A DNA stretch of 63,754 nucleotides, filler included, from Octopus bimaculoides (lineage: Eukaryota), in NCBI RefSeq assembly GCF_001194135.2. It is 6 parts of 6 records of this genome, joined end to end, with 100 filler letters (N's around TTAATTAATTAA, not from the genome) between each part and the next. Parts side by side here need not be neighbours in the genome. Positions count along the whole stretch, not along the records: positions 39,410 to 52,969 come from NC_068999.1; 5 more parts are not named here. One strand, given 5' to 3'. Made by a program: the position numbers and the translations under genes. The notes beneath the pieces were generated by a model. The model worked only from the letters and a program-made list of their open reading frames with translations, did not search any database and was not told the DNA's origin. Positions 28,565 to 53,013 of this stretch are shown one piece after another (within the stretch, counting starts at the first letter, position 1; the number at the start of each line of letters is the position of its first letter).

Positions 28565-28945
28565 TATCTTTAACTTGTTTCAGTCATTAGACTGCGACAA
28601 TGCTGGGGTAGCACCTTGAAGAATTTTTAGTCGAATGAATCAATTCCAGTACTTATTATTTTTAAGCCTGATACTTATTGTATTGGTATCTTTTGCTGAA
28701 CCGCTAAGTTACAGAGATGTAAACACACCAACACTGGTTGTCAATTGGTGGTGGGGGACAAACACAGACACAAAAACACACATACTTACATATGTCAGGC
28801 TTCTTTCAGTTTCTGCCTACCAAATCCACTCACAATGCTTTGGTTGGCCCAAGGCTATAGTAGAAGACACTTGCCTGATGTTTCATGCAGTGGGACTGAA
28901 CCCAGAACCATGTGGTTGTGAAGCCAGCATCTTACCACACAGCCA
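28565..28945 (-). mobile_element. SINE family B copy
   Basis: Homologous to 15325-15740. Confidence 0.7.
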
Positions 28946-50479: not shown

Positions 50480-52389
50480 TTATCGAAGGGAATGGGCCAG
50501 TGTTCGCAAGTACATGATCATTTCCGGTAGAGAAGGTCGAACTTCCGGTTTCACAGCTAGACAGTGTTGCAGTATTTTTAAGCGAGTCTTTCCTTTAAGA
50601 CGGTTGATAACTTGTTGGTAAACGTAGCATAAACTATAGATATCACTGGCTGGAGAGGTCGGGGAGCCAGCCCTGACTTCCGGCGCTAGGAATATGAAGT
50701 CGCTCAAGTCAATTTCATGAACTAGAAATACGTAAGCTTCATTGTAAGTGGCTCGGGAGAGGTCACTAAACCAGACAGGGTTTTTCGTATTTTCCGGATC
50801 AATCATAATGTTATATTCGTTTATATAATTAAGTAGGACTTCTTTGCGGTGTATTTCGAGGAGATGTATGGCGACGTGAATGAAGAAAACTAAAATTTCG
50901 GCATCAGAAAGACGGAGTGGATAATAATGCAAAATATTGGCAACGGACACCATTTTCCCGAAATATGACTGAACTATTTCGAATTCGTCCAAAAGGGTGC
51001 CTGTGGGCAACAAACCGTGAAATGGAAATACGGCACCCGTATCTTTTAAATGCAATAAAATTCGTGATTCTTCGAGGATTCTCACGAACGATCCATTTTC
51101 ATAGGAACGGATCATTACTTTACAATTACATTTTACGAATTTGCCAATTTGTAGTTTAGTGTCTCCTAAGAATTCATACATGTTAACAATCGCACTGTCT
51201 TTATAAGAGTCATTTTCAATAGAGCTGATGGCGTTTGGGCCAAGTATTGGTACATTGTACTGAATTAAAAGTGGGTAATTTTTTTCCTTTGTGTTTGGGG
51301 TCTGCCCCGGAAATTTTATTTTCTGTTGTTCTAACTTCTGTTTTTCTTTTATGAATAGCTCATTTATCGATACTGTTAAATCACTCAAAGTTGGTCGAGA
51401 ACCAGGCTCCGTTAGTAAACACTGGTTAGCTAGTTTCTGCAGTTCTTCAATGTGGCTAATATTACTGATACGACTAAGCAAAGAACCCAAACTGTAAACA
51501 TCTGACGCAGGAGTCCCTGGTTGGCTTTTTCGCAGCTCTGGAGCCAAATGTTCGTAAGTATATAGAGAACCGTTATAGTTTTTATATTTATAACCTGACC
51601 GGAAGGTTGCATGTCCCATGTCGATATAGACGACTCGCAGATAAGGCTGTTCTATAAGGACATTTCCTTCGTGGATGTCATTAAGAAGGACGTATTGTTG
51701 GTGTATCTTTTGTAAACCTGCCGTCAACTGCAGAGATATGTTTAACCAGTTCACGGCTGTCAATGTAGTTTCGTTCTCTTCGTTCAGATGGTCCTCCAGA
51801 GTCATACCGCTGATATATTCTTGGACCAACGAAAGGTTACTTGCCATAAGACCAGTCGGAAGTAAGCCTAAGATTTTGGGAATCACCCCCGTGCTTGACA
51901 GATATTGTGTGATTATCACTTCAGATATAATGTCCAAGTAATCAGAATCGAGAAACAGTTTCACAGCAACGACCTGTTTACTTACGGCCATCTCTGCCAG
52001 GTAAACCTCACCGAAAGAACCTTTACCAAGGAATACAACCTCGTCATCATAATCTCGAAAATAGCGAACAGATTCAGCGTCGAGAAGTTCCGTTCCGATA
52101 TGAGCCAAGTTAGGTGGAATATTTTGGTAGCTATAATTATATTGCAAGAATATATCCGAAATGTCTTTGATTTCATAATCTCTGTAACTTCTAGCAGTGG
52201 ACATTTCAGTTCCTTTCCTAGTTTTGTTGCTTTTTTTGATTTCTGAACAGTCTTTCTGACTTCCATCTCTAGTTTCTTTCCGTAAAGATTTCATGAGGAG
52301 TTGGTAGTTAAATCCGCAGCAACATTTCCCATTCCATTTTGGACAGCAGGCATTGGTAGAATTACACATTGCATTGCTTCCTGGTACTG
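50480..52389 (-). CDS. Tandem protein kinase + pseudokinase (>=629 aa) with Cys-rich N-terminus; single large terminal exon, probably 5'-partial
   Basis: Uninterrupted 629-codon ORF. Domain 1 (aa ~112-339): GKGSFG, VAVK, E150, LLNDIHEGN, DMG, APE, SDVYSLG, SRP. Domain 2 (aa ~399-625): MIRS, LLNYINEYN, DLS, APE, SDIYSL, RP. Splice acceptor tttttttcttctgtttcag ends at 52390. ATTAAA ~40 nt after the stop. Confidence 0.88.
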
Positions 52390-53013
52390 CTGAAACAGAA
52401 GAAAAAAAGAGTAGTTATTGAATCTGTAAATCTTAGATCATCAGGCGATTAATTATTTGAGAATTACATAACAATGACTTTCCTTTGAGTGAAGCTAAAA
52501 GCAATACTGAAAATTCTCTTACATAGCGAGTCTAAAATATTCTGATGGGTCTAGAAACTGTAACAATCAGGTTCGACATATAGAGATCGATAGAATAAGT
52601 ACCAAGCAGAAATAAGTACTAGAGTCGACATGGATGACTAAATCCTTGAAGGCCGAGCCTCAGCATGGCTGAAATCAATGAACTGAAACCAGTAAAAGAT
52701 TAGAAGAGCAAAAGAACATATATACTAAATGTGTTTAAAAATGATAAGTAATCGCCTGTAAGAAAAAAAAAAAAAAAGAAGTCTATTAAGATCAAGAACA
52801 TCTTTTCTAAAGATAGACGAACCTTTTACGTGGAGAAAAAAACACAGAGACAACAAAAAGCAAAATGGCAAAACATGTAAGTAATAAGCCCTTCCCCACT
52901 ACAATATAAAACCGACAAAAGTCTTTCTGAAACACGATACTGTAAAAGGGCTTCAAAGATCCTTTGAAGNNNNNNNNNNNNNNNNNNNNNNNNNNNNNNN
53001 NNNNNNNNNNNNN

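What the first reader, a model, noticed from the sequence alone, without database searches (positions are those of the whole stretch)
50480..52389. Intronless tandem kinase-pseudokinase gene arisen by internal duplication
Seen: a 629-codon ORF free of stops amid decayed repeats. Domain 1 keeps all catalytic residues (GxGxxG 115-120, K137, E150, D231, N236, D250-MG, APE, D290, R325). Domain 2 has lost the Gly loop, has R for the VAIK Lys and Y for the catalytic Asp (LLNYINEYN), and reads DLS. The halves share idiosyncratic motifs (QYN..P..G pre-kinase segment, GLLPTG, VLLN, PASD(V/I)YSL), indicating intragenic duplication. Established: animal dual-domain kinases such as JAK and GCN2 put the pseudokinase N-terminal; kinase-then-pseudokinase tandems are known as plant resistance proteins (e.g. 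wheat WTK1/Yr15). Inference: a lineage-specific tandem kinase protein, possibly immune or decoy-type, not matching a family I recognise.
Basis: partly seen in the sequence, partly recalled or inferred. Interest (0 to 1): 0.75.

Follow-up and report, generated by a model that had tools for sequence, protein, structure and literature searches.

The report
Conserved mollusc kinase–pseudokinase tandem gene
This is the main exon of a real, expressed and strongly conserved octopus gene for an active-looking protein kinase fused to a dead copy of itself; it belongs to an unstudied family found across molluscs, and its members probably enter the secretory pathway.

Summary
Domain 1 keeps all catalytic residues. 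Domain 2 has lost the Gly loop, the beta3 Lys (now R) and the catalytic Asp (now Y). The two halves are homologous (BLASTP E 1e-25; hhalign E 1.8e-47).

The gene is not intronless: a canonical acceptor sits at 52390-52391, residues 1-30 lie in an upstream exon, and cuttlefish transcripts splice across a 16.9 kb intron. It is not cephalopod-specific: tandem relatives occur in many gastropods and in the brachiopod Lingula, with single-domain relatives in bivalves and gastropods. The duplication is old, not recent.

The gene is Octopus bimaculoides LOC128250143 (UniProt A0A0L8GQN6), annotated but uncharacterised. Purifying selection is strong (omega about 0.02 for D1 and 0.05 for D2). No transposon or virus carries it.

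New here: tandem members usually start with a signal-peptide-like segment on its own small exon. Their kinase domains carry 1.7 times the expected number of N-glycosylation sequons, against 0.8 times in single-domain relatives. My best reading is a secretory-pathway kinase with a fused regulatory pseudokinase. Localisation and function are inferred, not shown.

The parts
52390..52409 (-). 3' end of the upstream intron: polypyrimidine tract and canonical AG acceptor (AG at 52391-52390)
   Evidence: Sequence read (ctttttttcttctgtttcag|CAG...). RefSeq model XP_052830831 (P0240) reads ...NQ/TVPGSNA across this junction. Residues 1-30 of P0001 are not found anywhere in the piece.
50480..52389 (-). 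Coding part of the large exon (exon 2 of the CDS) of O. bimaculoides LOC128250143 / UniProt A0A0L8GQN6, stop codon 50480-50482 included. It encodes residues ~31 to the end of the 666/667-aa protein.
   Evidence: Nucleotide conservation with Argonauta hians (79%) runs from 52404 to 50385 only.
52316..52366 (-). Six-cysteine cluster (ORF residues 2-18, C..CC......CCC), conserved in octopods and decapods
   Evidence: Alignment; cysteine positions. Its role is not tested: either a disulfide knot in a secreted protein or a palmitoylation cluster.
52067..52315 (-). Variable, predicted-disordered spacer (ORF ~19-70) followed by the conserved pre-kinase segment (ORF ~71-101)
   Evidence: AF2 pLDDT is below 50 for P0001 residues 25-108. 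dN/dS is 0.22-0.24 for the N-terminal part and 0.03 for the pre-kinase part. The pre-kinase motif is shared with gastropod members.
51329..52066 (-). Domain 1 (ORF 102-347): protein kinase domain with a complete catalytic set (G-loop 115-120, K137, E150, D231, N236, D250). It is non-RD (LND in place of HRD), has DMG in place of DFG, and has a short C-lobe.
   Evidence: AF2 pLDDT is 80-97 with a single helix between alphaF and alphaI. dN/dS is ~0.02.
51203..51328 (-). Inter-domain linker (ORF 348-389): a helical continuation of D1's last helix, then a low-confidence stretch
   Evidence: AF2; dN/dS 0.09-0.38.
50483..51202 (-). Domain 2 (ORF 390-629): pseudokinase. No Gly loop, R421 for the beta3 Lys, Y515 for the catalytic Asp. 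It keeps the alphaC Glu (E434), N520 and D536.
   Evidence: AF2 gives a kinase fold with pLDDT 65-93. dN/dS is ~0.05.

Best explanation
SHOWN. The ORF is the large second coding exon of a genuine, spliced, expressed host gene: Octopus bimaculoides LOC128250143, with orthologues in Octopus vulgaris, Argonauta, cuttlefish and another decapod. Its product has five parts in order. First comes a short hydrophobic N-terminus encoded by a separate small exon. Then a six-Cys cluster, a disordered spacer, a kinase domain with every catalytic residue intact, and a paralogous pseudokinase domain without the catalytic Asp, the Gly loop or the beta3 Lys. Both domains are under strong purifying selection. 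The protein belongs to an uncharacterised family. Tandem forms occur in gastropods and cephalopods, and a three-domain form occurs in the brachiopod Lingula. Single-domain forms occur in bivalves and gastropods.

INFERRED, fairly well supported. The duplication that made domain 2 predates the gastropod-cephalopod split. Domain 2 was already catalytically dead by then.

INFERRED, moderately supported. The N-terminal segment is a signal peptide or signal anchor, so the tandem proteins work in the lumen of the secretory pathway or outside the cell.

INFERRED by analogy only. Domain 1 is the phosphotransferase, and domain 2 serves as an allosteric partner or substrate-docking scaffold. This would resemble the paralogous pseudokinase Fam20A activating the secretory kinase Fam20C, here fused into one chain.
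For: Identity and orthologues:
- 100% match to A0A0L8GQN6 / XP_052830831.
- 84% identity to Argonauta and 70-72% to decapods over the full length.

Splicing and expression:
- Acceptor at 52390-52391, first 30 residues absent from the piece.
- Cuttlefish Logan contig L002 maps to the A. pharaonis genome as three blocks with a 16.9 kb intron, so it is cDNA.
- Decapod cluster members were seen on 84, 43 and 10 assembled contigs.

Selection:
- dN/dS is 0.020-0.021 for D1, 0.044-0.062 for D2 and ~0.05 overall.
- Conservation with Argonauta stops within ~100 nt of the coding exon ends.

Duplication:
-.
- D2 falls below Pfam thresholds on its own and finds nothing significant in the PDB, yet it folds as a kinase.

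Family:
- 44 cluster representatives at E<=1e-30.
- Every named one is a mollusc or Lingula.

Old, dead D2:
- All 24 tandem proteins lack the catalytic Asp (N in most, Y in cephalopods, C or R in Haliotis) and the Gly loop.
- D1 keeps the ND.H..N loop and D.G invariantly, and the beta3 K in every row that covers it.
- All D2s form one clade in the NJ tree.
- Cephalopod D2 is less like cephalopod D1 (hhalign score 154) than like gastropod domains (198-203).
- Haliotis shares the gene structure: a small exon for residues 1-22, then one large exon.

Secretory route:
- A hydrophobic N-terminal segment (Kyte-Doolittle 13-residue mean >=2.0) occurs in 12 of 29 tandem members with room for one, against 4 of 87 single-domain members.
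- N-x-S/T sequons in tandem kinase domains: 118 observed against 67.7 expected, or 1.11 per 100 aa. In single-domain relatives: 54 against 69.5, or 0.31 per 100 aa.
- The NLS sequon ahead of beta5 survives in the 24-sequence consensus.
- There is no internal transmembrane segment between the N-terminus and D1 (sequence).
Against: - No dedicated signal-peptide or topology predictor was available, and there are no localisation data.
- The octopus N-region has no positive charge and a Lys follows the hydrophobic stretch. This would also fit an N-out anchor with a cytosolic kinase.
- One O. vulgaris model and one decapod transcript use other first exons.
- Many family gene models lack an N-terminus, so 12 of 29 is a floor measured on imperfect data.
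- Canonical-fold protein kinases are rarely lumenal.
- Bootstrap support is weak: 44% for D2 monophyly and 26% for D1.
- Profile scores do not separate D2 orthology from independent duplications.
- AF2 pTM of 0.52-0.54 gives no confident D1-D2 interface.
- Catalytic activity of D1 and inactivity of D2 are read from motifs only.
Confidence: 0.6

Rival explanations
1. Same gene and family, but the protein is cytosolic and tethered to a membrane. The N-terminal hydrophobic helix would be an uncleaved N-out signal anchor. The adjacent cysteine cluster would be palmitoylated. The kinase-pseudokinase pair would then signal on the cytoplasmic face of a membrane.
For: - AF2 draws a 20-residue helix at residues 5-24.
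- The octopus N-region carries a Glu and no basic residue, and a Lys follows the hydrophobic stretch.
- There is a dense Cys cluster, C..CC......CCC, near the N-terminus.
- Nearly all canonical-fold kinases are cytosolic (general knowledge).
Against: - Sequons are enriched 1.7-fold in tandem kinase domains but depleted in single-domain relatives.
- Decapod N-regions are basic and are followed by acidic residues, which is the opposite charge pattern.
- The hydrophobic cores in Lottia and Lingula are only 12-13 residues and are followed by small residues, as in cleaved signal peptides.
- Gastropod members lack the Cys cluster.
Confidence: 0.25
2. An immune sensor or decoy that works like plant tandem kinase-pseudokinase resistance proteins. 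The dead domain would bait pathogen effectors and the live domain would signal.
For: - The kinase-then-pseudokinase order, with no other Pfam domain.
- A non-RD first domain, as in WTK1.
- Several paralogues in gastropods: Haliotis A and B, Patella A and B, and a four-domain Lottia protein.
Against: - Cephalopods show one orthologue cluster with dN/dS of 0.02-0.06, not the rapid turnover of resistance genes.
- Plant TKPs are cytoplasmic, have no targeting motifs, and derive from receptor-like kinase lineages.
- Plant receptor-like kinases fall outside the family in the tree.
- No infection-expression data were available.
Confidence: 0.08
3. One reading: an intronless, lineage-specific cephalopod gene whose pseudokinase arose by a recent internal duplication.
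For: - One long stop-free ORF holds both domains.
- Idiosyncratic motifs are shared by the two halves.
Against: - An upstream intron and a signal exon exist.
- Gastropod and brachiopod relatives share the same architecture.
- D1 and D2 are only 28% identical, whereas the octopus and cuttlefish proteins are 72% identical over the full length and D1 is nearly invariant across cephalopods.
- Cephalopod D2 scores lowest against cephalopod D1.
Confidence: 0.03
4. Cargo of a transposon or endogenous virus, or a decaying pseudogene.
For: The flanks are repeat-rich, and a decayed mariner-type transposase remnant lies 2.5-3.4 kb downstream.
Against: - No terminal repeats bracket the ORF.
- Conservation with Argonauta is confined to the exon.
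- The gene is spliced to exons many kb upstream.
- The 629-codon frame is intact and omega is ~0.05.
- An IMG/VR scan and a viral fold library return only generic kinases.
Confidence: 0.02

Closest known systems
Plant tandem kinase-pseudokinase proteins (WTK1/Yr15, RPG1; PMC6170490)
   Same: - An active-looking kinase followed by a pseudokinase in one chain, with no other recognised domain.
- The first domain is non-RD.
- Many plant members also arose by duplication of one kinase domain.
   Different: - The kinase lineage is unrelated: the plant domains are receptor-like-kinase types.
- The plant proteins are cytoplasmic, have no targeting motif and are polyphyletic.
- The mollusc proteins have a signal-like N-terminus on its own exon.
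- In cephalopods they form a single, highly constrained orthologue cluster.
JAK (JH2-JH1) and GCN2 (pseudokinase-kinase)
   Same: A kinase and a regulatory pseudokinase sit in one polypeptide.
   Different: - The order is reversed: the pseudokinase is N-terminal in JAK and GCN2 (general knowledge; PMC12867742 for GCN2's two domains).
- Their FERM/SH2 or RWD/HisRS-like domains are absent here.
Fam20A-Fam20C pair of the secretory pathway (general knowledge, not tested here)
   Same: As inferred here, a lumenal kinase works with a pseudokinase paralogue made by duplication.
   Different: - Fam20 proteins are a different, atypical kinase-like family, and no such Pfam match was found.
- Fam20A and Fam20C are two separate proteins, not a fusion.
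Single-domain mollusc relatives (e.g. Sinanodonta ACJMK2_010607, Potamilus CHS0354_039491, Solemya ScPMuIL_010916)
   Same: - The same kinase subfamily: (L/H/F)ND catalytic loop and the shared LAPEV...SDVYSLG block after the activation segment.
- 36% identity to D1.
   Different: - One domain at the C-terminus, after a long N-terminal region.
- Almost never a hydrophobic N-terminus (4 of 87).
- Sequon-poor kinase domains.
Lingula anatina LOC106167409
   Same: A signal-like N-terminus followed by tandem kinase domains of the same family.
   Different: - Three domains, all of which keep the Lys and the catalytic Asp.
- The three form their own clade (88% bootstrap), so they multiplied independently.

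Membership tests
Eukaryotic protein kinase superfamily (Pfam PF00069 / PF07714) | Profile match above the curated threshold | tested here: met
   For the whole protein, Pkinase scores 101.8 bits (cut-off 31.7) and PK_Tyr_Ser-Thr scores 81.4 bits (cut-off 23.1). Domain 2 alone scores 20.4 and 21.1 bits, below both cut-offs. Its membership rests on homology to domain 1 and on the predicted fold.
Eukaryotic protein kinase superfamily (Pfam PF00069 / PF07714) | Bilobal kinase fold | tested here: met
   In the AF2 models both domains have pLDDT mostly 75-97. Foldseek matches FGFR2, LCK, IRAK4 and MET with target-normalised TM 0.65-0.76. The C-lobe is short, with one helix where alphaG and alphaH normally sit.
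Active protein kinase (domain 1) | Gly loop, beta3 Lys, alphaC Glu, catalytic Asp and Asn, DFG Asp | tested here: met
   All are present in the window. The catalytic loop and D.G are invariant across the tandem proteins, and the beta3 Lys is present in every row that covers it. Activity itself is not testable here.
Pseudokinase (domain 2) | Loss of at least one of the beta3 Lys, catalytic Asp or DFG Asp | tested here: met
   R421 replaces the Lys, Y515 replaces the Asp, and there is no Gly loop. The DFG Asp (D536) is retained. Lack of catalysis and nucleotide binding are not testable here.
Plant tandem kinase-pseudokinase (TKP) family | Kinase then pseudokinase, with no other domain | tested here: met
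   This is a resemblance in architecture only.
Plant tandem kinase-pseudokinase (TKP) family | Domains derived from plant receptor-like-kinase lineages; cytoplasmic protein without targeting motifs | tested here: not met
   Plant receptor-like kinases fall outside the mollusc family in the domain tree. An N-terminal hydrophobic segment is present. The TKP features are taken from PMC6170490.
JAK / GCN2-type dual-domain kinases | Pseudokinase N-terminal to the kinase, plus FERM/SH2 or RWD/HisRS-like domains | tested here: not met
   The order is reversed, and no such Pfam domain appears at E<=1.
Known secretory-pathway kinase families (Fam20, FAM69/DIPK and the like) | Match to those families' own profiles | tested here: not met
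   Only Pkinase, PK_Tyr_Ser-Thr and a borderline ABC1 match were found.
Known secretory-pathway kinase families (Fam20, FAM69/DIPK and the like) | N-terminal signal peptide or anchor with a lumenal kinase domain | tested here: inconclusive
   Hydropathy and sequon statistics point that way. No dedicated predictor was available and there are no localisation data.
Names given by automatic annotation (Dictyostelium shkC; PRKCQ / protein kinase C theta) | SH2 domain after the kinase (shkC); C1/C2 domains and an AGC kinase with its tail (PKC theta) | tested here: not met
   No SH2, C1 or C2 match. PKC theta is only one of many ~40-bit hits. These names are best-hit transfers.

The most novel reading that the evidence does not exclude
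Molluscs, and in a three-domain form brachiopods, may have an old family of canonical-fold protein kinases that are sent into the secretory pathway. Each kinase would be fused to a dead paralogous domain that regulates it. That would be an extracellular or Golgi phosphorylation system that arose independently of Fam20, VLK and the other known secreted kinases.
Probability: 0.4. Interest if true: 0.65.

Novelty: new variant of a known kind. Interest (0 to 1): 0.45.

Why it matters
Kinase-pseudokinase pairs are a recurring regulatory design, seen in JAK, GCN2, Fam20A/C and plant resistance proteins. This is an animal family with the plant-like order (kinase first), kept for what is probably more than 500 million years. 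No paper in eight literature searches mentions it.

If the signal-peptide reading holds, it adds a canonical-fold kinase to the short list of animal kinases that act in the secretory pathway or outside cells. That would open the question of what molluscs phosphorylate there.

The result also corrects misleading automatic names in public records, such as 'shkC', 'PRKCQ' and 'melanoma receptor tyrosine-protein kinase'.

Tried and rejected
Searches that found nothing:
- Eight full-text literature searches on tandem kinases in animals, accession numbers, locus names, run accessions, secreted kinases in molluscs and lophotrochozoan kinomes found nothing on this family.
- An exact look-up of the 667-aa octopus protein found no contig.
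- The organisms behind the Logan runs could not be identified, including SRR29346471, which encodes the closest non-cephalopod relative (P0047).
- An IMG/VR scan and a viral fold library gave only generic kinases.
- Rfam and tRNA scans of the piece found nothing.

Tests that did not settle the timing of the duplication:
- Cephalopod-only D1 and D2 HMMs scored against gastropod domains gave an ambiguous answer. Gastropod D2s shift ~60 bits toward the cephalopod D2 model, but some still score higher on D1.
- The hhalign profile matrix tied: cephalopod D2 scores 198 against gastropod D2 and 203 against gastropod D1.
- NJ bootstraps for D1 and D2 monophyly are weak, at 26% and 44%.
- The first tree script timed out.

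Other dead ends:
- Two AF2 runs gave pTM 0.52-0.54, so no D1-D2 interface can be claimed.
- I first counted five cysteines in the N-terminal cluster. There are six.
- ORF 41886-42128 looked like a reverse-transcriptase fragment, but Pfam did not confirm it.
Full report
**Observation.** The piece (39410-52969) holds one long ORF at 50480..52369 on the minus strand, 629 codons.
- Domain 1: GKGSFG 115-120, K137, E150, D231 and N236 in LLNDIHEGN, DMG 250-252, APE 276-278, D290, R325.
- Domain 2: R421 in VMIR, Y515 in LLNYINEYN, DLS 536-538.

Pfam Pkinase matches at E 5.7e-29 in two stretches. The halves match each other at 90 bits, E 1e-25, 28% identity over 207 residues. Two profiles cut from a ten-species alignment match at E 1.8e-47 over 247 columns. 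For scale, domain 1's best solved-structure hit is 41 bits (CTR1). Domain 2 alone reaches only 17 bits, E 0.03, in the PDB and falls under both Pfam cut-offs. So domain 2's nearest relative by far is domain 1, and intragenic duplication is confirmed. GLLPTG, VLLN and PASD(V/I)YSL are in register. The 'QYN' coincidence is not, although a pre-kinase segment does belong to the repeated unit.

**What the gene is.** The translation is 100% identical to Octopus bimaculoides UniProt A0A0L8GQN6 (667 aa). RefSeq calls it 'uncharacterized protein LOC128250143'. Orthologues:
- Octopus vulgaris.
- Argonauta hians, 84% identity.
- Acanthosepion pharaonis and related cuttlefish transcripts, 72%.
- A second decapod, 70-71%.

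The automatic names 'shkC' and 'PRKCQ' are best-hit transfers. No SH2, C1 or C2 domain is present.

**Not intronless.** Directly upstream of the ORF lies a polypyrimidine tract and an AG (52390-52391). The annotated protein's first 30 residues are nowhere in the piece.

In the cuttlefish, a Logan contig carrying the complete CDS maps to the genome as three blocks: a 5' UTR piece, a 123-nt exon holding codons 1-30, and the large exon 16.9 kb further on. That contig is therefore spliced cDNA, which also shows the gene is expressed. Related cluster members were assembled from many runs, on 84, 43 and 10 contigs.

Haliotis rufescens has the same layout, with a small exon for residues 1-22 and then one large exon. 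Biomphalaria has three small exons and then a large one. Some transcripts and models use other first exons.

**Not mobile-element cargo, not decaying.**
- Nucleotide similarity to the Argonauta locus (79%) runs from 52404 to 50385 and then stops. Elsewhere only short SINE-like repeats match.
- No direct or inverted repeats bracket the ORF.
- Nei-Gojobori dN/dS is 0.020-0.021 for domain 1, 0.044-0.062 for domain 2, 0.09-0.38 for the linker and about 0.05 overall. dS is 1.4-1.9, close to saturation, and saturated between octopods and decapods.
- A scan of IMG/VR and a viral fold library return only generic kinases.

**Not cephalopod-specific.** A profile search of 1.84 billion cluster representatives found 44 proteins at E<=1e-30 and 287 at E<=1e-10. 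All those that carry names are molluscs or the brachiopod Lingula.
- Tandem proteins occur in Lottia (four domains, that is two pairs), Patella, Haliotis, Gigantopelta, Batillaria, Nucella, Elysia, Lymnaea, Biomphalaria and Physella.
- Lingula has three domains.
- Single-domain relatives, with the kinase at the C-terminus, occur in bivalves (Sinanodonta, Potamilus, Solemya) and gastropods.

Across 24 tandem proteins, domain 1 keeps the ND.H..N catalytic loop and D.G invariantly, and the beta3 Lys wherever the gene model covers it. Domain 2 never has the catalytic Asp (N in most, Y in cephalopods, C or R in Haliotis) and never has a Gly loop. Its beta3 residue is K, R or H, varying among lineages.

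**Age of the duplication.** In a neighbour-joining tree of 48 domains, all D2s form one clade. All tandem D1s but one form another. Lingula's three domains form their own clade at 88%. Support for the D2 clade (44%) and the D1 clade (26%) is weak.

Two profile tests do not settle D2 orthology. They do exclude a recent cephalopod event: cephalopod D2 scores lower against cephalopod D1 (154) than against gastropod D2 (198), gastropod D1 (203) or the single-domain profile (251).

The unnamed closest relative, P0047, groups with cephalopods (79% for D2). It has N at the catalytic position and R at beta3, which bridges the gastropod and cephalopod states.

With the shared architecture and exon layout, one duplication before the gastropod-cephalopod split is the most economical reading. 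It is not proven. By general knowledge that split is Cambrian.

**Structure.** Two AF2 runs gave mean pLDDT 72 and 81 (10 and 24 sequences). Both kinase-like domains are confident and residues 25-108 are disordered. Only one helix lies between alphaF and alphaI in each domain, so the C-lobe is compact. pTM is 0.52-0.54, so the mutual orientation of the domains is not predicted. The nearest solved folds are generic tyrosine-kinase and TKL types: FGFR2, LCK, MET and IRAK4, at TM 0.65-0.76 and about 20% identity. No known subfamily claims it.

**Where it probably works.** Full-length tandem members begin with a short hydrophobic segment. Examples come from Lottia, Lingula, Patella, Haliotis B, Lymnaea, Biomphalaria, Physella, the cuttlefish and the octopus.
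- A 13-residue hydropathy mean of at least 2.0 within the first 60 residues occurs in 12 of 29 tandem proteins that have room for it. It occurs in 4 of 87 single-domain relatives.
- There is no later transmembrane segment, so these are not receptor kinases.
- N-x-S/T sequons in tandem kinase domains number 118 against 67.7 expected from composition. In single-domain relatives they number 54 against 69.5, a 3.6-fold difference in density.
- By my own tally from the table, 13 of 15 lineage-thinned tandem proteins exceed expectation.
- One sequon, NLS before beta5, persists in the family consensus.
- Cephalopods add a six-cysteine cluster just after the hydrophobic segment.

Together these point to exposure to the lumen of the secretory pathway. 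I could not run a signal-peptide predictor. The octopus charge pattern would also allow an N-out anchor with a cytosolic, perhaps palmitoylated, kinase. That is the main rival, at 0.25.

**Mechanism.**
- Shown: an intact catalytic set in domain 1, a degraded one in domain 2, and strong constraint on both.
- Inferred: domain 1 phosphorylates secretory-pathway or extracellular proteins, and domain 2 acts as a regulatory or docking partner. The nearest functional analogue is the Fam20A-Fam20C pair (general knowledge), here as a fusion.
- Substrate class (Ser/Thr or Tyr) cannot be read. The catalytic loop has His where Ser/Thr kinases have Lys and where the single-domain relatives still have Lys.

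**Comparison with plant tandem kinases.** The order, the lack of other domains and the non-RD first domain are the same. The plant proteins are cytoplasmic, lack targeting motifs, derive from receptor-like-kinase lineages and are polyphyletic (PMC6170490). This is a resemblance in architecture, not membership. The single, slowly evolving cephalopod orthologue also speaks against a decoy role.

**Verdict.** The gene is annotated but unstudied. The family-level picture appears to be undescribed in the literature I could search: mollusc-wide, old, kinase-then-pseudokinase, and probably secretory.

Noticed in passing
window 47057-47966, minus strand: Decayed mariner-type transposase remnant. Pfam PF01359 (Transposase_1) hits lie in two different reading frames (E 5.8e-5 and 1.2e-3). 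By eye, the transposase frame is broken by at least four frame changes and several stop codons. It lies 2.5-3.4 kb downstream of the kinase stop codon and does not include the kinase.
   Followed up: partly
window 48059-48226 and 48237-48404: Two 168-nt copies, 100% identical, sit on either side of a 10-N gap (family D6). This is almost certainly an assembly artefact at a scaffold gap.
   Followed up: no
window ~40680-40850, 44679-44835, 46592-46764: Copies of a short SINE-like repeat in both orientations (I1-I3). The same repeat matches several places in the Argonauta hians locus L001, so it is an interspersed repeat shared by octopods. Neither ARAGORN nor Rfam finds a tRNA-like part.
   Followed up: partly
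window 45691-45744 / 46239-46292 and 43422-43475 / 43965-44018: Two pairs of 54-nt inverted repeats (91% and 80% complementary), each about 490 nt apart (I4 and I7). They look like small MITE-type elements.
   Followed up: no
window 39410-41470, 42707-42870, 49486-50236: Dense microsatellites, (TG)n, (TA)n, (GA)n and (TATG)n, with N gaps at 42785-42794 and 49805-49905. All the long 'ORFs' there are translations of simple repeats.
   Followed up: no
L010 (Acanthosepion pharaonis genome), ~28585-28655: The genomic copy does not read through where the transcripts do. tblastn splits into overlapping pieces. The annotated protein P0005 is truncated to 556 aa and skips part of the Cys cluster. A likely cause is an assembly or annotation error in that genome, not a broken gene.
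   Followed up: partly
L001 15791-19569 (Argonauta hians): The next called gene, 4 kb downstream of the Argonauta orthologue, encodes 466 aa with no Pfam hit on record. I did not check whether the octopus window holds its counterpart. Nucleotide search found none in the piece.
   Followed up: no
P0242 (O. vulgaris CAI9736880) and P0247 (decapod transcript), N-termini: Alternative first exons. One is non-hydrophobic and one has a different hydrophobic segment. Both join the same large exon. The gene may produce isoforms with and without the signal-like segment, or some models may be wrong.
   Followed up: no
P0045 (Lottia gigantea LOTGIDRAFT_158785): The whole kinase-pseudokinase unit, including its pre-kinase motif, is itself duplicated in tandem. 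This gives a four-domain, 1088-aa protein behind one signal-like N-terminus.
   Followed up: partly
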